IMG/VR virus record: IMGVR_UViG_3300024308_000302
Span: 62,001-126,000 of that record
Reading direction: 5' to 3' (one strand)
Length of the DNA stretch: 64,000 bases
Shown here piece after piece: positions 705 through 58,061 of this stretch. The notes beneath the pieces are model-generated. The model was not told where the DNA came from. It was given only the letters and a program-made list of their open reading frames with translations, and did not search any database. The position numbers were made by a program, and so were the translations under genes. Positions within the stretch are counted from its first letter, which is position 1, and each line of letters begins with the position of its first letter.

Positions 705-1382
705 TTAAAGTTTTACGCAAACATTTCCGACTTCATCAAGGAATAAAATTTCACTAGATTCAACAACATCCCGTAGATGTTTCAAACGAGTTTCTTCAAC
801 ATCTTTATTGATACGAGTCACGATAACCGTAACAGTGTCTGGCAATGCAGTGAAATTCAAGATAGATTCTTTACCGGGCTGTGCTGGCTTAATCGCATAC
901 TTGTCTCGAACTTGAATTTTTTTACCTTCAAAAATCACAATGTCAGTAGGTTGATTTTTCAAAGAAACTTCAAAATAAGAATTATCAATAGAAACCAGAA
1001 TGTCAGTTGGACGCCGACCTTCCAACATAGGAATTTTAAGATTCAATACGGATTCAGTAAAAATACTATTAACAGAATTGAATTGCTCATTGGTTACAGA
1101 AACAGAGTGCATAACAGTTTCATTTTTAAGTTTATTTCGGAAGTTAACAATAAACTCTTGTTCAATATCAGCATCCAGATTTTTAACCAAGTCATTGGCG
1201 TTATTCAAAACATCCAGCACATGATCAAAATGAAATTCAAGACCACTGGATGGAAGCATACCTTCAACATTTGAAGCCGCCATAGAAACCACATCAGACA
1301 TTGAAGTCAATTGTTTAGAAAGACCTTGAACGGAAGCCAAAGAAGAAATGTTGCCAACGATAATAATAGACATGTTATTCAC
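705..1382 (-). CDS. hypothetical protein
   Basis: 225 aa co-oriented ORF, no motif. Confidence 0.8.
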   Translation of the reverse strand: MNNMSIIIVGNISSLASVQGLSKQLTSMSDVVSMAASNVEGMLPSSGLEFHFDHVLDVLNNANDLVKNLDADIEQEFIVNFRNKLKNETVMHSVSVTNEQFNSVNSIFTESVLNLKIPMLEGRRPTDILVSIDNSYFEVSLKNQPTDIVIFEGKKIQVRDKYAIKPAQPGKESILNFTALPDTVTVIVTRINKDVEETRLKHLRDVVESSEILFLDEVGNVCVKL

Positions 1383-1472
1383 CTGAATGTTTGTAGGTTC
1401 CTATTATACCTAAAAAAGAAAAAAATGACAACAAAAAAGCCGCTCGAAAGCGGCTTAAAAATTAAATTTATA

Positions 1473-2111
1473 TTATTCGTTCATCATAGCTTGCAGAATG
1501 GCAATAGATTTTACTCTTGGTTGTAAAAGCTCTTTAACCGCCCACATTTTTTCAAACAAATTAAACCAAAAAACAGAATCCCAAGATTTCAAAGAGTGAA
1601 GTTCGGTACTATTAAGGCTATGTTCAGTGCAAAGAGCTTTAATAATAGCTTCAATCAATTCACCACAAGCTTTTTTCCAACTGTTATCAATGTTTTCTGG
1701 CATATTGAATAAAAGTGGGTGACTTGCAAGTACAGTAAGTTCTTGAGAAGTAATACTTCGTTGTGAATCAAAATTGCAAGAAGCAAAAACATCAATATTT
1801 GCTTCAATATACTTATATTGCATAAGTTTCATTTCTCGTTCCACAACACGAGATTTATAAAAATCAGGAATAAGTTTTTTAATATCTTTGTCAATAATTA
1901 AAGGTTCTTGAAGATCTTTTGGAATATTCATGACTGCTTTACGAGGATTGGTTTCTTTCAAACCATCAACATGCAATTTACCATCACTGCCCCAATAGGC
2001 AAATGGTTCGCGTAAAAGAAGATGTGATAAAACAGAAAGGCGACTAGGAAAAATAGTAGGACTTTTAAGCATGAGACGCTTAACAATAACATCGGCATGA
2101 GCAAGTTTCAT
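1473..2111 (-). CDS. hypothetical protein
   Basis: 212 aa ORF, followed by terminator GCCGC-TCGAAA-GCGGC at ~1440-1455. Confidence 0.8.
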   Translation of the reverse strand: MKLAHADVIVKRLMLKSPTIFPSRLSVLSHLLLREPFAYWGSDGKLHVDGLKETNPRKAVMNIPKDLQEPLIIDKDIKKLIPDFYKSRVVEREMKLMQYKYIEANIDVFASCNFDSQRSITSQELTVLASHPLLFNMPENIDNSWKKACGELIEAIIKALCTEHSLNSTELHSLKSWDSVFWFNLFEKMWAVKELLQPRVKSIAILQAMMNE

Positions 2112-2191
2112 AAAATTTCTCCTGTGATAAGGACGCCATTATACACATTATACAAAAAGAATACAATAAAAAACCGCCCGAAGGCGGCTTT

Positions 2192-2593
2192 TTAATTGTT
2201 CAAGTCATCAAATGAGAACCGGAGTGGCATAATATCACCAAATTTAAACACTTTGAAGTCACCATCAATATTTGACAAGATAACTTCAGCGTCAGGTTCC
2301 AAAAATTCACTCATAACCTGAAGGCACGCACCACAAGGAACAATATGTTTTTCGGTATCAGCAGTAATAGCAATGCTGATGTAATCACCTTTTTTGCAGC
2401 CTTGCATATGGGCAGAATAAATAGCAGTACGTTCAGCACACATACAAAGTGAATATGAAGCGTTTTCGATGTTCGCACCCAAAAAAACACCTTTAGTGGT
2501 CAAAAGTGCGGCACCTACAGGGAATTTGGAAGCCAGCGAGTGAGTAAAGCTTTTAGCTTCAATCGATTTTTGAACAAGTTCCTTGTGATTCAT
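2192..2593 (-). CDS. cdd: cytidine deaminase (homotetrameric type)
   Basis: FPVGAAL, GANIENASY, Zn motifs CAE and PCGAC; start MNHKEL. Confidence 0.93.
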   Translation of the reverse strand: MNHKELVQKSIEAKSFTHSLASKFPVGAALLTTKGVFLGANIENASYSLCMCAERTAIYSAHMQGCKKGDYISIAITADTEKHIVPCGACLQVMSEFLEPDAEVILSNIDGDFKVFKFGDIMPLRFSFDDLNN

Positions 2594-2725
2594 TCGAAGT
2601 CTCTTTCTCATAAGTGGTTGATTATATGAGTGCAGTATAGCAAAGAAAGCATTATCAATCAAGCAAAATAAACATTTTCAAAATAAAAACCCGGCTTAAT
2701 GCCGGGTAAAGTATGCTTTGTAAGT

Positions 2726-3085
2726 TTAAACAGACATTTTTTTCAACTGTTCAACAAAAGCACTCGATTCAAAACGTTCAATGTCAGCAAAATTATTTTG
2801 CCCACCAGTAAAATCACGACGCCCTTTACAAGTTCTGAACAGAACTTTCAAGCCATCGCTGCCAAAGGATTGTCCAATTTGAATATAAAGTTTTTCACTA
2901 TGAAGAGTAACTTCACCAGAAACAGCAATACCAGCTTTATTGCTACGAATATCATAGGAACCAACAGGAAGATTAAGTTTCGTAGCAAGTTCTTTCAGGG
3001 CTTTTTTACCAGCACGATGAAAAGCGTCCTTGTCTTTTTCGTTATAAGAAAGATCTTTTTTGTTTAACTGTTGAAGAGTAGCCAT
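2726..3085 (-). CDS. hypothetical phage protein
   Basis: 119 aa ORF with RBS and own promoter/terminator. Confidence 0.8.
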   Translation of the reverse strand: MATLQQLNKKDLSYNEKDKDAFHRAGKKALKELATKLNLPVGSYDIRSNKAGIAVSGEVTLHSEKLYIQIGQSFGSDGLKVLFRTCKGRRDFTGGQNNFADIERFESSAFVEQLKKMSV

Positions 3086-3166
3086 TTTGTAAACCTCACT
3101 TGGTAAGAATTAAAGCTATTATACACATTTATTGATAAAGAGACAACAAATATTAACTGATTAAAA

Positions 3167-3412
3167 TTATTGTGAAATATGTAGCTGAACGGTGTCAGTG
3201 ACCAGACCAAAAACATCAATATCATATTGTTCAACACGCGGATCATCCCAGTTGAGTTCTTTCAAGTGAGCAACGAATTTCACATAATCATCATGATCTT
3301 TGAAATGAAAAGCGGATGAACGTGGGCCACCCATATAGAAATGACCAGCACTGGACTTGCAAAGGTATTGGTGCGAACCTGCAGAATTTACGGTGCTTGC
3401 AAAAATGGTCAT
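3167..3412 (-). CDS. hypothetical protein
   Basis: 81 aa ORF, AAAGG RBS. Confidence 0.75.
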   Translation of the reverse strand: MTIFASTVNSAGSHQYLCKSSAGHFYMGGPRSSAFHFKDHDDYVKFVAHLKELNWDDPRVEQYDIDVFGLVTDTVQLHISQ

Positions 3413-4182: not shown

Positions 4183-5316
4183 TTAACCAGCGTCTTCGGT
4201 AGTCACACCAAGTGCTCCAAGGTCTACTTCGTCTAAAGACCAGTCAGACAAGTGATTACGAGAATAGAAAGTCAAGTAATCGTTTTTGAAGCCTCGAACC
4301 GCATTCATCACAAAAGAGAACTGTGGATGACCTTTCAGAGCAATTGCAACATCTTTGATAGGTTGGCCAACAAATTGCTTAGCAATTTCGTGGACTTCTT
4401 TATCAAGGTTTTCAATATGAGCCTTGATGCTATCATTGATATGATGAATGGTAGTCAAATCTGCTTCTGGTGCGTTCAATGCTAAGTAAGCAATATAATC
4501 ATCAAGTTTCTCTTCGACAACCAGTCGGGCAATGTCACGCTGACGAACAAAGGTAACAGCATGGTGCAATTCCATATACCATTTGGTTTTGATTTTAACC
4601 ATTTCACCATTCGCAAATTGAATTACATAACCTTCAATACCTTGAACAGTATTCAGCGACTTGATAAGGCTTGGCAAATCATAACCAACACCAAACAGCG
4701 GCTTGTTAACTGGAATATCAAACTTTGCAGCCAAAATTTCTTTTTCAACTGGCATGAGATATTCACCAGTGATATTGTCACGAACATGAAGCAAAGTCAT
4801 GTTTTCTTCGTCATATCGCAGAACAATACGATGGCTTGGCGAAGTGAACTCGAAAATAGGCGAAAGATTTGCCATCGAGCAATATTTAGTGAAATCGTAG
4901 TATTTCTGGTTTTTAGCAACAAACCCTTCTGATGCAACAGCAACATCAGATTTGAACGATTTTTTCGATTTCGCAAAGAACTGACCGTTCAGGAAACCAG
5001 CCGAAATCATCGAGCCGTCCATTTTGTCAAAACCCGCAACCATCGTATCCCAATTCAATACAGCGGGTTGAACTTCTGCACGCTCTGCAAGGTTGAAGAA
5101 TTTGTGCAGTGGGCGGGAAAGAATTTTGCCATCAGCATCAAAAGCGATACCACGGGCTTCTTTTTCCATCGGAGTGGTGAAGGACTCACCATTGCTGATA
5201 TTGTAGCAAATGACAGTAGCGTCATTCGATTGTTTGTTGATGCCAATGTATTCCTTATGTTGAACATGAGGAAGCATATCGTTGATGGTTTCGATACGTG
5301 GGAAGATACTGGGCAT
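4183..5316 (-). CDS. rnlA: T4 Rnl1-like RNA ligase
   Basis: Nucleotidyltransferase motifs KMDGS (I), EGYVI (IV), VKIK (V), plus KFFN and IFEF. Confidence 0.9.
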   Translation of the reverse strand: MPSIFPRIETINDMLPHVQHKEYIGINKQSNDATVICYNISNGESFTTPMEKEARGIAFDADGKILSRPLHKFFNLAERAEVQPAVLNWDTMVAGFDKMDGSMISAGFLNGQFFAKSKKSFKSDVAVASEGFVAKNQKYYDFTKYCSMANLSPIFEFTSPSHRIVLRYDEENMTLLHVRDNITGEYLMPVEKEILAAKFDIPVNKPLFGVGYDLPSLIKSLNTVQGIEGYVIQFANGEMVKIKTKWYMELHHAVTFVRQRDIARLVVEEKLDDYIAYLALNAPEADLTTIHHINDSIKAHIENLDKEVHEIAKQFVGQPIKDVAIALKGHPQFSFVMNAVRGFKNDYLTFYSRNHLSDWSLDEVDLGALGVTTEDAG

Positions 5317-43382: not shown

Positions 43383-43394
43383 TGTGTTACTTAG

Positions 43395-43465
43395 CAAAGT
43401 GGCAGGATTTAAACCTACAACCTCCACTCGGTTAGAGTGGCTATCTGACATTGATATACACTTTA
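43395..43465 (-). ncRNA. tRNA-like element without CCA
   Basis: Full cloverleaf: TAAAGTG/CACTTTG, TATC/GATA, CCACT-CTAACCG-AGTGG, GTAGG-TTTAAAT-CCTGC; lacks D-loop GG and T-loop C. Confidence 0.6.
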
Positions 43466-43489
43466 CCTGTTCCGGCGTTTCAGCCTAAA

Positions 43490-43568
43490 CCCATATCAGT
43501 GATGGGACTTGAACCCATGACCTTCTCTCTTCAGAGATTATCTACCGACTGATATACACCTTTATGGG
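43490..43568 (-). ncRNA. tRNA-like element with extended acceptor stem and 4 nt anticodon loop
   Basis: TATC-AGTCGGTA-GATA, TCTCT-GAAG-AGAGA, ATGGG-TTCAAGT-CCCAT, GGTG/CACT plus CCCATA/TATGGG. Confidence 0.6.
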
Positions 43569-50171: not shown

Positions 50172-51301
50172 TTGACATCCACCCCATAGCTAAAGCAAGG
50201 AGATTCCTTCCGCAAGACGGCCATGCCCGACCGCAAGAATGTTAATGGCTGCGTTTACATCTCGTTGATGTATGCCACCGCATACATCACATTTCCATTC
50301 TCTTATTCGCAGCCCATCTAATCCTTTCGGCCCAGTTAAAGACTTACAAAGATGACAGGTGCGGGTTGTGTCTCTTTCGTCAACATTATTATCTAGTAGT
50401 ATGCCTGCGTTATCGCATTTATTTTTCAGCATACTTCTAATCAGGCCAAAGCCTGCATCTAATGTTGACTTTCCTCTTTTTGCTTTGAGCATTTTCTTAA
50501 TGCTCAAATCTCCAACATAAATCTCACTAAAATTTTTGACTAAATTTGTAGTGAATTTATGTAGAGAGTCTTTTCTAATATTAGCAATTTTAGCATGAAT
50601 ATTACGAACTCTTTTTTTATTATTAGCTCTTTGTTGAACTTTTAATTGTTTTTCATATTGTCTATAAACTTGATTATATTTAGTTTCACTTCCATCACTA
50701 GCCGTAGCAGAAGCTTTGAACCCAAGATCAACACCAACAGCCCCTTGACCAGACGACAATACTCTTGGTACTTCAACAACAACATTGAAGTACCAACGAC
50801 CACGAGCATCTTCATTAAAAGAAGCATTTTTAAATTCGTATTTTGACAGTTCATAACTGTCAAATACTGAATAATATTGCTTATTGAAATAAACTTGACC
50901 ATTCACCCAAGAAGCTGCTTTTGAGTTTATTGGAATCCAACCAAGACTTCTTCTTGATCCAAATGTTTTTCGCCATTTGAGTTTTTGTTTTTTAAACTGT
51001 TTTCTTCGAGTAGCATATTCTTTACAAATGGATTGAATGGTTTGACTATGCAAACCAAGTTCTTTAGCAGAACCATTGGTATATTTTTGCAGATCATAAT
51101 TTGAAAGAAACTTTTTATGTTCAACTATGTTTCTATGACTTAATTCATTAAGATAATTCCAAACAAAATTAACGTTCTTAGCCATCTGGCAAAGAACGTT
51201 TTTATGTTTATCTTTAACTCTAACTTTTAGAGTTTTTGTTGTATATTCGGAATTATTCATAGGTGAAATTATAGATTAAAATAAGAAAAAAGTCAATAGT
51301 T
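50172..51301 (-). mobile_element. IS200/IS605-family tnpB-only element
   Basis: Right end GGAATCTCC...GGGGTGGATGTCAA overlapping the tnpB stop; no tnpA; left end uncertain. Confidence 0.75.
50190..51260 (-). CDS. tnpB: RNA-guided endonuclease TnpB (rearranged RuvC type)
   Basis: VDLG, IYVGDL, VDERDTT, CHLC...CDVC Zn finger, RDVNAA. Confidence 0.93.
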   Translation of the reverse strand: MNNSEYTTKTLKVRVKDKHKNVLCQMAKNVNFVWNYLNELSHRNIVEHKKFLSNYDLQKYTNGSAKELGLHSQTIQSICKEYATRRKQFKKQKLKWRKTFGSRRSLGWIPINSKAASWVNGQVYFNKQYYSVFDSYELSKYEFKNASFNEDARGRWYFNVVVEVPRVLSSGQGAVGVDLGFKASATASDGSETKYNQVYRQYEKQLKVQQRANNKKRVRNIHAKIANIRKDSLHKFTTNLVKNFSEIYVGDLSIKKMLKAKRGKSTLDAGFGLIRSMLKNKCDNAGILLDNNVDERDTTRTCHLCKSLTGPKGLDGLRIREWKCDVCGGIHQRDVNAAINILAVGHGRLAEGISLL

Positions 51302-52088: not shown

Positions 52089-52221
52089 AATAAACTCCAA
52101 ATAAATTAGCCTTCAAATTGAATGGATTATAACATAAAAAAGAAAAATTGACAACAAAAAAGCCTACTAGATCACTCTAATAGGCTTCTTTGTAAAGGCT
52201 TTCCACCTTATACGGAAGGTT

Positions 52222-52352
52222 TGGTGCGTATATGCCCACACAGGTCACGAACTGTTGCCAGTCTGGTAGCCACTTCACTATTGAACCAATGTCTTAACCA
52301 TAAAGGGATACGGGCACTGATTCTCAATATGTCACAGTTAGAACTATACTGC
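52222..52352 (-). ncRNA. ~131 nt CCA-ended structured RNA
   Basis: GC(A)GTAT/ATACGC+ACCA; D-arm-like GTTCT/AGAAT; long arm GTGCCC/GGGCAT. Confidence 0.55.
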
Positions 52353-52415
52353 AGCACCTTTGTTTCAAGTTCATATAGGCCATCGAGACAGCCATTCACA
52401 AAGGTTAATACAAAT

Positions 52416-52510
52416 TGGCAGGCTGGTCTGGCCTCGAACCAGAAACTTCCACTCACTCGTGGTGTTTTACCAGAGATCCTATGGCGGATCTATTTTAAAC
52501 TACTCAACCT
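52416..52510 (-). ncRNA. 95 nt aberrant tRNA (Trp-like ends)
   Basis: AGG...CCTGCCA; T-arm TCTGG-TTCGAGG-CCAGA; hairpin inserted in D-loop; 6 nt anticodon loop. Confidence 0.6.
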
Positions 52511-52545: not shown

Positions 52546-52651
52546 TGGTGGAAGCGGAAGGATTCGAACCTCCGTGCGGCAAGGTATAGGTTGGTAACAC
52601 CACCCCTCCGCTTAGTTACCTCAGAGTTAAGCCAGACTACTCTACACTTCC
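52546..52651 (-). ncRNA. 106 nt aberrant tRNA with expanded anticodon arm
   Basis: GGAAGTG/CGCTTCC+ACCA, GAGT/ACTC D-arm, GGAGG-TTCGAAT-CCTTC T-arm, ~50 nt between D and T arms. Confidence 0.7.
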
Positions 52652-52791: not shown

Positions 52792-52869
52792 TGGTTGCGG
52801 GAGCAGGATTTGAACCTGCGATCTCCAGCCAATGAAGCTGGTGAGTTAACCGGACTACTCCATCCCGCG
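52792..52869 (-). tRNA. tRNA-Met(CAT), fMet-like acceptor
   Basis: 78 nt cloverleaf with C1:A72 mismatch, anticodon loop TTCATTG, encoded CCA. Confidence 0.88.
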
Positions 52870-52950: not shown

Positions 52951-53015
52951 CGTATAAAAAAGAGCCGGTTCACCCAACCGTTTTATTTAGACATGTTACT
53001 TATCATCTAAATCTC

Positions 53016-53107
53016 TTGAAAACCTTGTGCCACTGGCACTGACCAACGCCCCGTCCACGCTTGGTCTATTGTAGAGCCTTTATTTCTCTACCCCTTGTTC
53101 GTTTCAA
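53016..53107 (-). ncRNA. three-hairpin RNA motif, copy 1
   Basis: Starts at +1; TTGAAA/TTTCAA closing GTAGAG/CTCTAC, GACCAA/TTGGTC, GTGCC/GGCAC. Confidence 0.55.
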
Positions 53108-53114
53108 TGAGATA

Positions 53115-53143
53115 AGTATAGCAAAATCCAATCTTCATGTCAA
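53115..53143 (-). promoter_or_regulatory. sigma70 promoter of the RNA operon
   Basis: TTGACA-17-TATACT with TG-C extension. Confidence 0.8.
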
Positions 53144-53197
53144 AGCTTTTTGCAGAGTTTTTCCAATAATTTTTCAGATCAAGATCATCACTGCACG

Positions 53198-55524: not shown

Positions 55525-56478
55525 TCAAATGATTTTGAATTTTTTTACACCACCAAGAGAAAAATGAGCTATTTTGAAGTCCACCAACCTATACAGCAAG
55601 TCCAAAGTATAAGCAGAATCGTTGCCAGCATTATGAAGATAGCTTGAAAAATGGTTGACTTTAAGAGCTTTCAAAGCATCTTTAAGCGAAATATAATGAT
55701 TTTTGGCTGATTTTGCTGCAATGGATTCACATTCATTATAAATAACAGAAGATGTATCAATACATTTAATATGTTCAATTTGAGTCATATCAAAATTACA
55801 ATGACGCAAAATTTTGAATTCAATAGGTAATGCGTGACCAATAATAAAATCAACATCTTTTAGATGCTCAATGAGGATTGGGGCAAAATCATCATGAGTT
55901 ACGAGCACAGATGTGCCAAATTTGAAAGTGTCCATTCGTTTTTTAGTTGTTGTATAGTGAAAATGATTAACAACGCCATCAAAAGAAATAGTGACGCCCA
56001 TTTCAAAGATTTCTATTTTTTTTGATGAATCACGATATTCAAAATCAAGGGAAAGAATCTTTTTTCCTTCCAAGCTAATAGGAAGGGGAGATTCAAATTT
56101 TTCTGCAAATGCAGCTTTCTTTTCTTTGCGAACAGCAATACGTTTTTGTTCAATATCATTGAAAATAAGTTTGAATTCTTCATGGGAAGAAACATCAAAA
56201 AATTCAAGTTTTTCTTTTGAAAATTTTGCATACTTTTTGAATGCTGTAACTTTAAGTTCCAAAGAAAATAAACTATTTACATAATCAATAATTGGAATCA
56301 AAGAATTTTTTCCAATATGAATTTTATCTTCAAATATACAGAAAGAAGAAACAAGACCTTTATCAAAAAGATCTTGTTCATTGAAAACAGATTTAAATTG
56401 TGAAGCCAAATCACGATTTTCAATAAAAATAGATTGATTTAAAAAAGTAGATTTGAGAACTGCAAAGTTATAAATCAT
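55525..56478 (-). CDS. DEDDh 3'-5' exonuclease domain protein
   Basis: LDFEY, IIGH, IDTS, HNAGNDSAYT. Confidence 0.85.
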   Translation of the reverse strand: MIYNFAVLKSTFLNQSIFIENRDLASQFKSVFNEQDLFDKGLVSSFCIFEDKIHIGKNSLIPIIDYVNSLFSLELKVTAFKKYAKFSKEKLEFFDVSSHEEFKLIFNDIEQKRIAVRKEKKAAFAEKFESPLPISLEGKKILSLDFEYRDSSKKIEIFEMGVTISFDGVVNHFHYTTTKKRMDTFKFGTSVLVTHDDFAPILIEHLKDVDFIIGHALPIEFKILRHCNFDMTQIEHIKCIDTSSVIYNECESIAAKSAKNHYISLKDALKALKVNHFSSYLHNAGNDSAYTLDLLYRLVDFKIAHFSLGGVKKFKII

Positions 56479-56596
56479 GGTTAATCCTATTTTCATTAAT
56501 CAAAGGAATTTAAATAATTAATGCATTATAGCATAGGCTGGAGAAAAAGACCAACAAAAAAGGGCCGACTGGCCCTCTCTGAAACTTTTTTGATGT

Positions 56597-56993: not shown

Positions 56994-58061
56994 TCAGAAT
57001 GAATAAATATTCATTTTAGGAAGTTCCCAAAGATAAGGTGCAATTTTAATACGTTTCTTTTGAATATTATAAGGATGCTCAATAAATTCAACCATTTGAA
57101 GAACAGCCATCAAAGTATAAGCCGCATCATTACCAGCATTATGCAAAATCAAAGAGTTATGTTCAATTTTCAAAATATGAAGCATATTTGACAAAGAAAC
57201 AGATTTATTTTTCATGTTTTCAAAGTAAAAATTGAAACGAGATTTCATTAGACCTTGAGAATCAATTACTTTCAGGTTATCAATAGACAGAATATCAATA
57301 CCATGATGTTTGAGAACAATATGTTCACTTGAAACAGAATGGCCAATAAGGTAATCAACATTAAGCAAGCGATCTTTAACAATAATCAACAATTCTTGAA
57401 CTGTAACAAATTGACTGTTACCAAACAGAAACTTATTACTTACATCTTTAGGATAGTGGTTCTCACCAATAGTGTCATTAACAATATAATGCTCATAGCT
57501 AATGACACCATCCTTAAAAATAGCCATACCACATTCCAAAATCGTCCAGTCTTTATTGGAATCAAACTCAAAATCAATAGCCATGATACGATTTGACTTG
57601 AAATTGGCAGATAACTGACTATTGAGTTTTTCTGTAATTTGAATTTTTTCTATACTTTCGGCTTTCTTTTCTTCTTTAATAGCAGCCCGAACAGCATCTT
57701 TACTTTCTTTATGCTCACCATTCATATTGAAACGAATTTGCTCAACAGCATCTTCAAATGTCAAGTAATCAGAAACTGTAAATGCAATTTCAGCTTTAGT
57801 TGATTGCGGGTCTTGAATATCAAATCCAAATTGATTTTTAATAGCATTCATGATTTTTGCAAGTTGCATTTCATCAAAAAGAATTGTTGAGCTTTTAGAA
57901 ACATAAAGTTCATCAACAAAATCTTTTTTTGCAACTTTAGAAAGCTTATAATTTTCCATGAAATCTGCAAAGACAATTTTTCTTTCTTTTTTAGTCTTAA
58001 ATTGATCAATCAAGCTTTCTTTGAAAGCTACTTGAACAGAGTTCCAGAAATAAAGGTTCAT
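56994..58061 (-). CDS. DEDDh 3'-5' exonuclease domain protein (paralogue of 55525..56478)
   Basis: IDFEF, LIGH, IDSQ, HNAGNDAAYT. Confidence 0.85.
   Translation of the reverse strand: MNLYFWNSVQVAFKESLIDQFKTKKERKIVFADFMENYKLSKVAKKDFVDELYVSKSSTILFDEMQLAKIMNAIKNQFGFDIQDPQSTKAEIAFTVSDYLTFEDAVEQIRFNMNGEHKESKDAVRAAIKEEKKAESIEKIQITEKLNSQLSANFKSNRIMAIDFEFDSNKDWTILECGMAIFKDGVISYEHYIVNDTIGENHYPKDVSNKFLFGNSQFVTVQELLIIVKDRLLNVDYLIGHSVSSEHIVLKHHGIDILSIDNLKVIDSQGLMKSRFNFYFENMKNKSVSLSNMLHILKIEHNSLILHNAGNDAAYTLMAVLQMVEFIEHPYNIQKKRIKIAPYLWELPKMNIYSF

What the first reader, a model, noticed from the sequence alone, without database searches (positions are those of the whole stretch)
52222..52358. 131 nt CCA-ended RNA with a large central domain
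An acceptor-like helix with ACCA and a D-arm-like hairpin are followed by a GTGCCC/GGGCAT helix enclosing ~70 nt that includes an ACAG-TTCGTGAC-CTGT T-loop-like hairpin, i.e. the T-like element is displaced inside the arm.
Basis: partly seen in the sequence, partly recalled or inferred. Interest (0 to 1): 0.6.

Follow-up and report, generated by a model that had tools for sequence, protein, structure and literature searches.

The report
Unannotated phage RNA family beside tRNAs
The flagged stretch is not a CCA-ended tRNA-like RNA but overlaps a member of a widespread, so far unannotated structured RNA family that large phages (including about 280 sequenced Ackermannviridae) carry inside or next to their tRNA gene arrays, and whose function is unknown.

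Summary
However, the fold is no better than shuffles (z -0.85) and its long-range helices are not conserved in relatives.

Comparative data redraw the gene. Window 52194-52326 (-), plus the terminator to about 52156, belongs to a structured RNA family with at least 54 distinct members:
- five covarying helices, P1-P5;
- an almost invariant 23-nt P1 loop;
- an invariant UGG junction;
- a GNRA hairpin;
- a CAAAC junction;
- a UGGAAAG loop.

The 'T-like' hairpin competes with the conserved GNRA hairpin. The 5' 28 nt belong to a separate upstream hairpin module.

The family matches nothing in Rfam 15 and shows no detectable homology to T4 rnaC/rnaD. In 15 of 47 loci it lies within 25 nt of a same-strand tRNA. 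It also sits in the 'gene-free 2 kb' next to the tRNAs of Ackermannviridae.

Loop positions 11 and 14 are Watson-Crick in 53 of 53 sequences, forming a self-complementary tetranucleotide.

One wastewater RNA-seq run holds a closed 174-nt cycle (52311-52484). One of its ends lies inside the invariant loop. This is unexplained.

Function is unknown. My best guess is a stable trans-acting RNA of the tRNA/translation sphere.

The parts
52194..52326 (-). Core of the conserved structured RNA (family member): 5' UGAG, P1, J1/2, P2, J2/3, P3, P4, J4/2, P5
   Evidence: CM R1 scores 99.5 bits, E about 1e-20. An independent profile HMM built from 30 members without the window hits 52195-52325(-) at E 1.4e-20; it is single copy in the 290-kb record. 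BLAST finds the core in five related phage records.
52283..52323 (-). P1 hairpin: 9-bp stem (52315-52323 with 52283-52291) closing the nearly invariant 23-nt loop CCCGUAUCCCUUUAUGGUUAAGA (52292-52314)
   Evidence: Eight of nine P1 pairs change on both sides across 54 sequences; the loop is invariant except at positions 3, 5, 11, 12 and 14. Loop positions 11 and 14 (52304, 52301) are Watson-Crick in 53 of 53 sequences, with four pair types.
52215..52276 (-). Three-way junction domain: P2 (GAAG 52273-52276 with CUUC 52215-52218), J2/3 UGGCUACCAG (52263-52272), P3 ACUG-GCAA-CAGU (52251-52262), P4 long hairpin (52224-52248), J4/2 CAAAC (52219-52223)
Evidence: P2, P3 and P4 all covary: every pair changes on both sides and 83-96% of cells are paired. 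P3 and P4 changes relative to the nearest relative L206 are compensatory.
52195..52209 (-). P5 hairpin AAGG-UGGAAAG-CCUU with conserved loop
   Evidence: All five pairs covary; loop consensus is GGU(G/U)GAA(A/U)NCC.
52154..52193 (-). Intrinsic terminator (10-bp core stem 52161-52186, U-tract 52156-52160) ending the RNA cluster
   Evidence: Terminator scan. Relatives G001-G005 and L074 carry a different terminator at the same place.
52331..52406 (-). Separate upstream module: hairpin H1 (52398-52405 with 52356-52363) and hairpin H2 (52348-52353 with 52333-52338).
   Evidence: A paralog at 83% identity lies directly upstream of tRNA-Asn at genome 126651-126726, with compensatory changes in H2. 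It was not found in five related records.
52416..52510 (-). 95-nt CCA-ending tRNA-like gene (acceptor and T arm good, anticodon region aberrant). Its middle resembles a degenerate copy of the family's P1-loop and J1/2 region.
   Evidence: ARAGORN finds it only at a lowered threshold or with an intron allowed; there is no Rfam tRNA hit. The resemblance was seen by eye in the sequence.
52546..52651 (-). 106-nt CCA-ending tRNA-like gene with an oversized anticodon/variable region
   Evidence: ARAGORN finds it only at a lowered threshold. There is a weak match to the tmRNA tRNA-like domain (14.6 bits).
52792..52869 (-). tRNA-Met(CAU) with C1-A72 mismatch (initiator-like), first gene of the cluster
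   Evidence: ARAGORN and Rfam, 56 bits.
52311..52484 (-). 174-nt segment recovered as a closed cycle (circular or head-to-tail RNA) in one wastewater RNA-seq run. The joint lies at a CCG present at both ends, so the 3' boundary falls between 52314 and 52310 inside the invariant P1 loop and the 5' boundary between 52488 and 52484 in a hairpin of the 95-nt tRNA-like gene.
   Evidence: In read laying a contig of 204 nt (174 + 30) at depth 17.4 with 0 mismatches 'goes back 174', with no coverage on either flank. The DNA run X6 is colinear across the same region.

Best explanation
SHOWN: The interval straddles two units of a minus-strand, CDS-free RNA gene cluster. The cluster runs: initiator-like tRNA-Met, two aberrant CCA-ending tRNA-like genes, a leader hairpin module, a structured RNA, and an intrinsic terminator. 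The structured RNA (52194-52326, about 170 nt with its terminator) is a full-length member of a conserved phage RNA family. The family has five covarying helices (P1; a P2-closed three-way junction with a GNRA-capped P3 and a variable P4; P5). Its near-invariant single-stranded elements are the 23-nt P1 loop, UGG at the start of J2/3, CAAAC in J4/2 and the UGGAAAG-type P5 loop. The family occurs in phages of 48-448 kb from many hosts. It sits preferentially inside or at the edge of tRNA gene arrays on the tRNA strand. INFERRED: It is transcribed with the tRNAs. It is released as a discrete stable RNA by the enzymes that mature tRNA precursors and, where a flanking P0 helix exists, by a double-strand-specific RNase. 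In the window the terminator makes the 3' end. Conservation pattern: the loops are invariant across phages of unrelated hosts and no phage protein gene is linked to the RNA. I therefore think it most likely acts in trans on a universally conserved host component of the tRNA/translation apparatus. The invariant UGG in a helix-flanked bulge and two T-loop-like motifs (UAAGA in P1, UGGAA in P5) are candidate contacts for a tRNA 3' CCA end and elbow. The self-complementary apical tetranucleotide is a candidate homodimerisation (kissing) site. The specific target and the output are not shown.
For: Family and fold: 54 distinct members; 89.8% of cells paired against 33-45% when partners are slid; 28 of 33 pairs change on both sides; covariation score 0.60 against 0.15 in shuffles (the 19-sequence set is). 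Window membership. Not in Rfam 15. tRNA linkage: 24 of 47 loci have a tRNA in the fetched flank, all on the same strand, 15 of them within 25 nt. In phage Ag3 it ends 20 nt before a tRNA, at the end of a 1.85-kb CDS-free stretch, the 'unusual 2 kb region' noted for CBA120 (PMC3184105). About 280 GenBank phages carry it unannotated. Flanking P0 helices of 6-13 bp occur in six tRNA-array loci. No conserved neighbouring protein is seen beyond close relatives, and Rnl1 is present in only 3 of 25 carrier records. Loop 11-14 pair: 53 of 53 Watson-Crick with four types; position 12 is A or G in 48 of 53 and never C. Terminator.
Against: There is no direct expression data for the mature RNA. The one RNA-labelled run that holds this locus covers 52311-52484 but not the body 52194-52310. 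Either the body is not stable in that sample, or only a circular species survives there. The invariant motifs show no significant complementarity or similarity to E. coli rRNAs, RNase P RNA, tmRNA or three tRNAs. The T-box and T-loop resemblances are recalled from memory, and the Rfam T-box model gives no hit. In several loci the RNA sits directly upstream of an ORF with a ribosome-binding site, which fits a cis-regulatory role as well. The alignments used for pair counts were fitted to the model.
Confidence: 0.55

Rival explanations
1. One reading: a discrete 131-137-nt tRNA-like RNA, 52222-52358, with an acceptor-like helix ending in ACCA, a D-arm-like hairpin and a T-loop-like hairpin displaced into a large central arm. 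It would be comparable to T4 species 1/2 RNAs and perhaps aminoacylatable.
For: The complementary segments exist. The gene lies at the end of a tRNA(-like) cluster, as T4 rnaC/rnaD do. T4 rnaD shares short strings (AUGAG start, GCUACC, GACUGAU-GG, GCGCACCA end; read).
Against: The fold is not better than shuffles and there is no tRNA or tRNA-like call. The acceptor helix consumes the CC of the CCA. The ACCA lies inside the conserved P4/J4/2/P2 segment, and the transcript continues through P5 to a terminator 35-65 nt further on. The T-like hairpin overlaps the covarying GNRA hairpin P3. GUGCCC is P1 stem plus invariant loop. None of these helices is kept in the nearest relative L206. Models R1 and R2 do not hit T4 rnaC/rnaD at E <= 10.
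Confidence: 0.04
2. RNA-processing element or ribozyme. The invariant P1 loop would be a cleavage (and perhaps ligation) site, self-catalysed by the conserved core or made by a conserved host nuclease. In this phage, cleavage there and at a look-alike CCG site in the upstream tRNA-like gene, followed by ligation, would release a 174-nt circular RNA.
For: A closed 174-nt cycle is seen in RNA-labelled run X19. One boundary falls inside CCCG|UAUCCC of the invariant loop and the flanks are not covered. The conservation pattern (invariant loops and junctions, covarying helices, a GNRA loop for docking) is the pattern of small ribozymes. The upstream boundary lies in a segment resembling a degenerate copy of the P1-loop region. 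This genome encodes a T4 Rnl1-type RNA ligase.
Against: The evidence is one contig in one run whose RNA label is a guess. A linear RNA with terminal CCG repeats plus reverse-transcriptase template switching gives the same cycle. There is no hit to any Rfam self-cleaving ribozyme. Ligase is absent from 22 of 25 carrier records, and G000 has no RtcB and no reverse transcriptase. No tRNA emerges from the circle or from the joined flanks. No bulge-helix-bulge motif was found by inspection.
Confidence: 0.15
3. Cis-acting leader (riboswitch or T-box-like tRNA sensor, or an antitermination signal) that controls read-through of the terminator or translation of the gene or tRNAs that follow.
For: In L206 it lies between a sigma-70-like promoter and an ORF. 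In L060, L063, L065, L077, L221 and L244 an RBS and start codon follow within about 30-60 nt. In the window, G001-G005 and L074 a terminator follows directly. In Ackermannviridae it precedes the tRNA array. The P2-UGG(N)(N)ACC-P3 arrangement resembles the T-box antiterminator bulge (my recollection of that family).
Against: The downstream genes are unrelated between lineages. No alternative pairing between the RNA core and the terminator was found by inspection. Many copies lie between two tRNAs with nothing to regulate. The Rfam T-box model does not match. There is no Stem I or specifier architecture.
Confidence: 0.15
4. DNA-level element (recombination or att site, homing target, mobile mini-element) rather than an RNA.
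For: In L054 the element is flanked by a 16-nt direct repeat of the 3' end of the preceding tRNA-Gln. L069 has tandem copies. The 23-nt block is near invariant.
Against: Helices tolerate G-U pairs and covary strand-specifically. The apical tetranucleotide is a palindrome only if G-U is allowed (UGUA and GGUC, 20 of 53). The orientation always equals that of neighbouring tRNAs. The tRNA-end repeat is unique to L054.
Confidence: 0.03

Closest known systems
T4 species 1 and species 2 RNAs (rnaC, rnaD)
   Same: Small non-tRNA RNA genes at the distal end of a phage tRNA operon, on the tRNA strand, a few nucleotides from a tRNA. Their function is also unknown (PMC3014915).
   Different: No detectable sequence or structure homology. 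The T4 RNAs end in CCA or tRNA-like 3' parts, while this family ends in a P5 hairpin, a terminator or the next tRNA. The P1 loop is absent from T4.
T-box riboswitch discriminator (antiterminator with UGGN bulge)
   Same: From my knowledge of the family: a helix, a bulge starting with invariant UGG and often continuing (N)NACC, then a capped hairpin, preceded by an A-rich linker and a hairpin. The theme is tRNA-related.
   Different: No Stem I, specifier or K-turn arrangement. An extra hairpin P4 lies inside the closing helix. There is no mutually exclusive terminator pairing, no link to aminoacyl-tRNA synthetase genes, and no Rfam T-box match.
Large ornate phage-associated RNAs (GOLLD, ROOL) and other tRNA-adjacent phage motifs
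   Same: Structured RNAs of unknown function that recur next to tRNA genes in phage genomes (my knowledge). A self-complementary apical loop would allow multimerisation.
   Different: This family is much smaller (130-210 nt), has a different fold, and gives no Rfam hit to GOLLD or ROOL.
Retroviral-type kissing-loop dimerisation hairpins
   Same: An apical loop with a short palindrome that changes between lineages while staying self-complementary.
   Different: Only 4 nt in a 6-nt loop, and dimerisation is untested. A cross-loop 11-14 pair closing a two-nucleotide loop explains the same covariation.

Membership tests
tRNA / tRNA-like (Rfam RF00005, ARAGORN) | Cloverleaf with 7-bp acceptor stem, free NCCA or discriminator end, and a 5-bp T stem with a 7-nt T loop | tested here: not met
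   No hit on 52194-52358 at gathering score, at E <= 10, or at lowered ARAGORN thresholds. The 5-bp 'acceptor' includes the CC of the CCA, and the T-like loop has 8 nt.
T4 rnaC/rnaD (species 1/2 RNAs) | Location within or after the phage tRNA operon on the same strand | tested here: met
T4 rnaC/rnaD (species 1/2 RNAs) | Sequence and structure homology to the T4 RNAs | tested here: not met
   CM R1 (whole RNA) and CM R2 (3' domain, filters off) give no hit on rnaD and only a 13-bit chance-level hit in rnaC. R2 also misses divergent true members, so remote kinship is not excluded.
New family defined here (P1-loop RNA of phage tRNA arrays) | P1 hairpin closing the loop CC(C/U)G(U/A)AUCCC-NNUN-UGGUUAAGA with a G-C closing pair | tested here: met
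   Window 52283-52323; the loop matches the consensus, with tetranucleotide UUUA.
New family defined here (P1-loop RNA of phage tRNA arrays) | P2-closed three-way junction with UGG after the P2 5' strand, GNRA-capped P3, P4, and (C)AAA(C/U) before the P2 3' strand | tested here: met
   GAAG/CUUC, UGG, ACUG-GCAA-CAGU, and CAAAC.
New family defined here (P1-loop RNA of phage tRNA arrays) | P5 hairpin with a GGU(G/U)GAA-type loop | tested here: met
   AAGG-UGGAAAG-CCUU at 52195-52209.
T-box riboswitch (RF00230) | Stem I with specifier loop, plus an antiterminator/terminator switch carrying the T-box sequence | tested here: not met
   No Rfam hit at E <= 1 on five relatives or at E <= 10 on L054. 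Only the UGG..ACC bulge resembles it.
tmRNA / RNase P RNA / 6S / SRP / Y-RNA-like | Match to the curated covariance models | tested here: not met
   No match on the element. The weak tmRNA-like matches lie elsewhere: window 52546-52651 and Ag3 locus L264:1901-2137.
Known self-cleaving ribozymes (hammerhead, twister, twister-sister, pistol, hatchet, HDV-like, hairpin) | Match to the Rfam models | tested here: not met
   Self-cleavage itself cannot be tested with these tools.
DRT2-type template RNA (rolling-circle reverse transcription, 'neo' gene) | Adjacent reverse transcriptase; repeat unit with short terminal direct repeats and an endless reading frame | tested here: inconclusive
   The 174-nt cycle has a CCG at both ends, is a multiple of 3, and has two stop-free circular frames (2% of shuffles). 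But the 290-kb record has no RVT_1 gene, and neither frame has an AUG with an RBS.

The most novel reading that the evidence does not exclude
The family is a new catalytic or processing RNA. Its invariant P1 loop is a site of specific cleavage and ligation, so phage tRNA-operon transcripts give rise to small circular RNAs (here 174 nt). Alternatively it is a homodimerising tRNA-binding RNA that manipulates host tRNA or translation. Either would give a function to the 'gene-free 2 kb' of Ackermannviridae and would be a new class of phage RNA.
Probability: 0.2. Interest if true: 0.85.

Novelty: new variant of a known kind. Interest (0 to 1): 0.62.

Why it matters
Phage tRNA operons have been known since T4 to carry extra stable RNAs of unknown role. 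This is a second, much more widespread example with a well-defined fold. It is present in hundreds of cultured phages of Salmonella, E. coli, Shigella, Klebsiella, Dickeya, Vibrio and Acinetobacter, and in many uncultured phages. It can therefore be studied at once in laboratory systems.

The 23-nt loop is nearly invariant across unrelated hosts, which points to a universally conserved bacterial target. The possible circular RNA and the self-complementary loop are unusual for bacterial systems.

For annotation, the family explains part of the 'empty' region next to Ackermannviridae tRNAs. It also shows that CCA-like strings in such clusters can mislead.

Tried and rejected
- tRNA, intron-containing tRNA or permuted tRNA. 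ARAGORN with introns and lowered thresholds, run on the locus, on the doubled 174-nt circle and on the joined flanks, gives nothing credible.
- Synteny through neighbouring proteins. The 169-aa ORF has no relatives. The 384-aa ORF has relatives, but the RNA lies elsewhere in those records.
- The 16-mer from the upstream module gave only chance matches in viral contigs. The module is absent from five related records.
- Exact loop pattern in 185,579 prokaryote genomes: none. A looser pattern gave 118 places, of which only one is a true member: a 526-bp contig of a Flavobacterium assembly.
- Conserved protein neighbours: none beyond close relatives. Rnl1 co-occurrence: 3 of 25 records. RT and RtcB are absent from G000.
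- An intraloop helix P1a (loop positions 2-6 with 13-17) is rejected: the 5-14 pair is unpaired in 34 of 54 sequences.
- A pseudoknot between J2/3 (CUACC) and the P5 loop (GGUGG) has partial support only and no mutual-information signal.
- A tRNA 3'-end direct repeat as a general feature: seen only in L054.
- Antisense or mimicry relation to E. coli 16S, 23S, 5S, RNase P RNA, tmRNA or tRNAs: not above shuffles. Isolated 14-17-nt similarities to 23S and M1 RNA were judged chance.
- Alternative genetic code: ORF lengths do not improve with TAG or TGA read through. No code other than 11 was used.
- A third covariance model without the window could not be calibrated. A profile HMM was used instead.
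- Supplementary tables of the phage structured-RNA catalogue (PMC10690425) are not held, so I could not check whether an unnamed candidate there overlaps this family.
The big protein searches, structure prediction and complex prediction were not needed.

Full report
**1. What is at the coordinates**

The RNA strand is the minus strand. Reading it from 52990 downwards, the region contains:
- a terminator-like hairpin (52979-52963);
- an initiator-like tRNA-Met (52869-52792; 56 bits);
- a 106-nt CCA-ending tRNA-like gene (52651-52546);
- a 95-nt CCA-ending tRNA-like gene (52510-52416);
- a spacer with two hairpins (52406-52331);
- a strong intrinsic terminator (52193-52154);
- a sigma-70-like promoter (52154-52126) for a 169-aa ORF.

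The two tRNA-like genes are seen only by ARAGORN at lowered thresholds. No CDS of note lies between 52160 and 52990.

The window is part of a 290-kb IMG/VR virus record (32% GC, 35 tRNA genes, all genes on one strand). That record sits in a 1.54-Mb metagenome contig.

**2.

As a fold, however, the 137 nt are unremarkable. The MFE is -39.5 kcal/mol against -36.2 +/- 3.9 for shuffles (z = -0.85), and the MFE structure does not contain the GUGCCC/GGGCAU helix. No tRNA finder and no Rfam family matches. The 'acceptor' helix GGUGC/GCACC uses the two C of the supposed CCA.

**3. Relatives redraw the gene**

BLAST of the cluster against five related phage records found one conserved block only, window 52265-52315 (79-87% identity). 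Pattern scans with the conserved loop, followed by a covariance model (R1), brought the family to 54 distinct sequences from viral and metagenome contigs.

BLAST with one of these sequences showed that about 280 GenBank phages carry the element, unannotated. Most are Ackermannviridae of Salmonella, Klebsiella, Escherichia, Dickeya, Serratia and Shigella, with some Acinetobacter and Vibrio phages.

In the 185,579 prokaryote species genomes I found a single true member, on a 526-bp contig.

A profile HMM built from 30 members without the window hits window 52195-52325 (-) over its full length at E = 1.4e-20. It hits nothing else in the 290-kb record.

**4. Architecture**

From 5' to 3' the family has:
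- 5' UGAG (in about 60% of members);
- P1, a 9-bp stem closing a 23-24-nt loop, CC(C/U)G(U/A)AUCCC-N11-N12-U-N14-U(U)GGUUAAGA;
- an A-rich linker (AAUAG);
- the P2 5' strand;
- invariant UGG followed by (C/A)(U/A)ACC in most members;
- P3, capped by GNRA;
- P4, variable and sometimes with large insertions;
- (C)AAA(C/U);
- the P2 3' strand;
- P5, with loop U(G/U)GAA(A/U)N.

On the 54-sequence alignment 89.8% of cells are paired, against 33-45% when the 3' partners are slid. Of 33 pairs, 28 change on both sides. The covariation score is 0.60 against 0.15 in shuffles (the 19-sequence version is). The alignment was fitted to the model, which favours the model. The slid controls and the number of pair types (up to six per pair) nevertheless leave little doubt about P1, P2, P3, P4 and P5.

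A helix I first drew inside the loop (P1a) is rejected: its 5-14 pair fails in 34 of 54 sequences. A blind mutual-information scan found one new pair, loop positions 11 and 14. It is Watson-Crick in 53 of 53 sequences, with U-A 31, G-C 17, C-G 4 and A-U 1. Position 12 is A or G in 48 of 53 and never C, next to U13, which the search pattern fixed. The tetranucleotide is therefore self-complementary if G-U is allowed (UAUA, UGUA, GGUC, GAUC, CAUG, CGUG, AAUU). The exceptions are UUUA (as in the window) and CUUG. This fits either a kissing homodimer or a cross-loop pair over a two-nucleotide loop.

**5.

In window coordinates:

| Element | Coordinates and sequence |
|---|---|
| P1 | 52315-52323 with 52283-52291 |
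| P1 loop | 52292-52314 |
| P2 | GAAG 52273-52276 with CUUC 52215-52218 |
| J2/3 | UGGCUACCAG 52263-52272 |
| P3 | ACUG-GCAA-CAGU 52251-52262 |
| P4 | 52224-52248 |
| J4/2 | CAAAC 52219-52223 |
| P5 | 52195-52209 |
| Terminator | to about 52156 |

It follows that:
- the 'T-like' hairpin ACAG/CUGU takes the 3' strand of the covarying GNRA hairpin;
- GUGCCC is the last three P1 pairs plus the first three invariant loop bases;
- the first 28 nt (GGUGCUGCAG...) belong to another module.

That upstream module has a paralog at 83% identity in front of tRNA-Asn elsewhere in the genome, with a compensatory change in the 'D-arm-like' hairpin.

**6. Context**

In 24 of 47 loci a tRNA gene lies in the fetched flank, always on the same strand. 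In 15 loci it lies within 25 nt, upstream or downstream. In several arrays the RNA is enclosed by a flanking helix of 6-13 bp formed by its 5' and 3' flanks, as expected for a unit excised from a polycistronic precursor.

In phage Ag3 the RNA ends 20 nt before the first tRNA of the cluster, at the end of a 1.85-kb CDS-free region. [quoted passage not shown]

Elsewhere the RNA follows a protein gene and ends in a terminator (G001-G005, L074). In other loci it lies between a promoter and an ORF (L206), or just upstream of an RBS (L060, L063, L065, L077, L221, L244).

No protein family recurs beside it. A T4 Rnl1-type ligase is encoded in this genome but in only 3 of 25 carrier records.

**7. Comparison with known families**

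- Rfam 15 has no match at any threshold I could use.
- T4 rnaC/rnaD share the genomic situation and a few short strings, but two covariance models do not detect them. Their role is itself unknown (PMC3014915).
- The helix-UGG(N)(N)ACC-hairpin arrangement recalls the T-box antiterminator bulge, and UAAGA and UGGAA recall T-loops. These are recollections, not tests, and the T-box model does not match.
- The invariant motifs show no above-chance complementarity or similarity to E. coli rRNAs, M1 RNA, tmRNA or tRNAs.
- A catalogue of more than 8,000 unnamed candidate structured RNAs from IMG/VR exists (PMC10690425). I could not check it for overlap.

**8. Reads**

The locus is held colinearly by DNA runs from 13 studies, covering subsurface, freshwater, soil, food and plant samples and several isolates.

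Of the RNA-labelled runs, X19 (wastewater) has one contig of 204 nt, depth 17.4, with no mismatch. It maps as 52413-52484 followed by 52311-52442. This is a closed 174-nt cycle, since 174 plus the 30-nt overlap of a k = 31 graph gives 204. There is zero coverage on both flanks.

Because CCG precedes both boundaries, the joint can lie at any of four positions. On the RNA strand the segment starts in the hairpin GAUCC-GCCAUA-GGAUC of the 95-nt tRNA-like gene. It ends within CCCG|U of the invariant P1 loop. This means either a circular RNA or a linear RNA of about 177 nt with terminal CCG repeats joined by template switching.

Caveats:
- the run's RNA label is a guess;
- contigs cannot show ends or strand;
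- this is a single observation.

The cycle has two stop-free circular frames (2% of shuffles). There is, however, no reverse transcriptase or RtcB in the record, and no tRNA arises from the circle or the joined flanks. I leave this as unexplained. It is the main reason to keep a processing or ribozyme reading alive.

**9. Verdict**

The finding as written is largely wrong in its anatomy, but it sits on a real and interesting object. That object is a full-length member of a widespread, unannotated, well-structured phage RNA family linked to tRNA arrays.

Shown:
- the family and its fold;
- the window's membership and the gene boundaries;
- the linkage to tRNA genes;
- the absence from Rfam.

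Inferred:
- co-transcription and excision with the tRNAs;
- trans action on a conserved host component (my best guess is tRNA or the translation apparatus);
- possible dimerisation.

Not settled: whether the P1 loop is a cleavage or ligation site.

Noticed in passing
window 52416-52510 and 52546-52651 (-): Two CCA-ending tRNA-like genes with good acceptor and T arms but aberrant, oversized anticodon/variable regions. The Rfam tRNA model misses both. The 106-nt one gives a weak match to the tmRNA tRNA-like domain (E 0.004).
   Followed up: partly
window 52331-52406 (-); paralog at G000 126651-126726 (about 650 nt beyond the window's end): A 76-nt two-hairpin module occurs twice in the genome: once before the structured RNA and once directly before tRNA-Asn, downstream of a perfect TTGACA-17-TATAAT promoter. 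It has a compensatory change in hairpin 2 and may be a leader or processing module. A similar string (UGCAG-GUAUAGUU-AAC-CUG) stands at the start of the tmRNA-like region of phage Ag3.
   Followed up: partly
L264 (Shigella phage Ag3, NC_013693) 1350-3200: The 'gene-free' region of Ackermannviridae holds a tmRNA-like reading frame, ANDDVVLMAA followed by two stops, preceded by AAAAAUAAAU. It also has a T-arm/acceptor piece upstream (ARAGORN 'permuted tmRNA' at a lowered threshold; Rfam tmRNA_permuted 29.8 bits) and a 33.7-bit match to the enterobacterial sRNA family STnc100.
   Followed up: partly
window 50190-51260 (-): TnpB (OrfB_IS605 plus the Cas12f-like TNB domain) lies 1 kb downstream of the RNA cluster. 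A TnpB-like gene also follows the RNA in relative G005 (L041), and a longer TnpB-like ORF lies at genome 264692-266527.
   Followed up: no
window 4183-5316 (-): T4 RnlA-type RNA ligase 1 (phrog_562, E 1e-66; PF09511), that is, tRNA-repair equipment.
   Followed up: partly
G000 whole record; L075: The 290-kb 'provirus' is identical to part of a 1.54-Mb metagenome contig, and relative G005 to part of a 1.86-Mb contig. Its largest ORF is 666 aa, nearly all genes are on one strand, and most large ORFs have no PHROG hit. It has 35 tRNA genes, with many copies of Leu(UAA), Arg(UCU) and Met. The nature of the replicon (giant phage, island or other) is unclear.
   Followed up: partly
G000 179840-179914 and 180849-180923 (-): Two tRNAs with anticodon CUA (amber-suppressor type). 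ORF lengths give no sign that TAG or TGA is recoded.
   Followed up: partly
window 43393-43466 and 43494-43563 (-): ARAGORN calls a tRNA-Val(AAC). Rfam calls a neighbouring tRNA (38 bits) whose anticodon loop is only 4 nt in the alignment. They form another pair of odd tRNA genes.
   Followed up: no
window 52960-53145 (-): A sigma-70-like promoter (TTGACA-17-TATACT with TG) is followed after about 130 nt by a terminator-like hairpin, just upstream of the tRNA-Met. It may be a short transcript or an attenuator.
   Followed up: no
L069 2012-2143 and 2598-2728 (+): Two full copies of the family RNA lie 455 nt apart on one metagenome contig, with different apical tetranucleotides (UAUA and GAUC). 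There may be a third, degenerate copy at 2799-2925.
   Followed up: no
L054 9847-10140 (+): Here the family RNA is bracketed by tRNA-Gln and a 16-nt direct repeat of that tRNA's 3' end (CTGCTTTCCCATCCAA). This is the signature of an insertion or a deletion between two tRNA copies, and it is unique to this locus.
   Followed up: yes
window 55525-56496 and 56994-58061 (-): Two paralogous ORFs with the C-terminal domain of DEDDh (DNA polymerase III epsilon-like) exonucleases.
   Followed up: no
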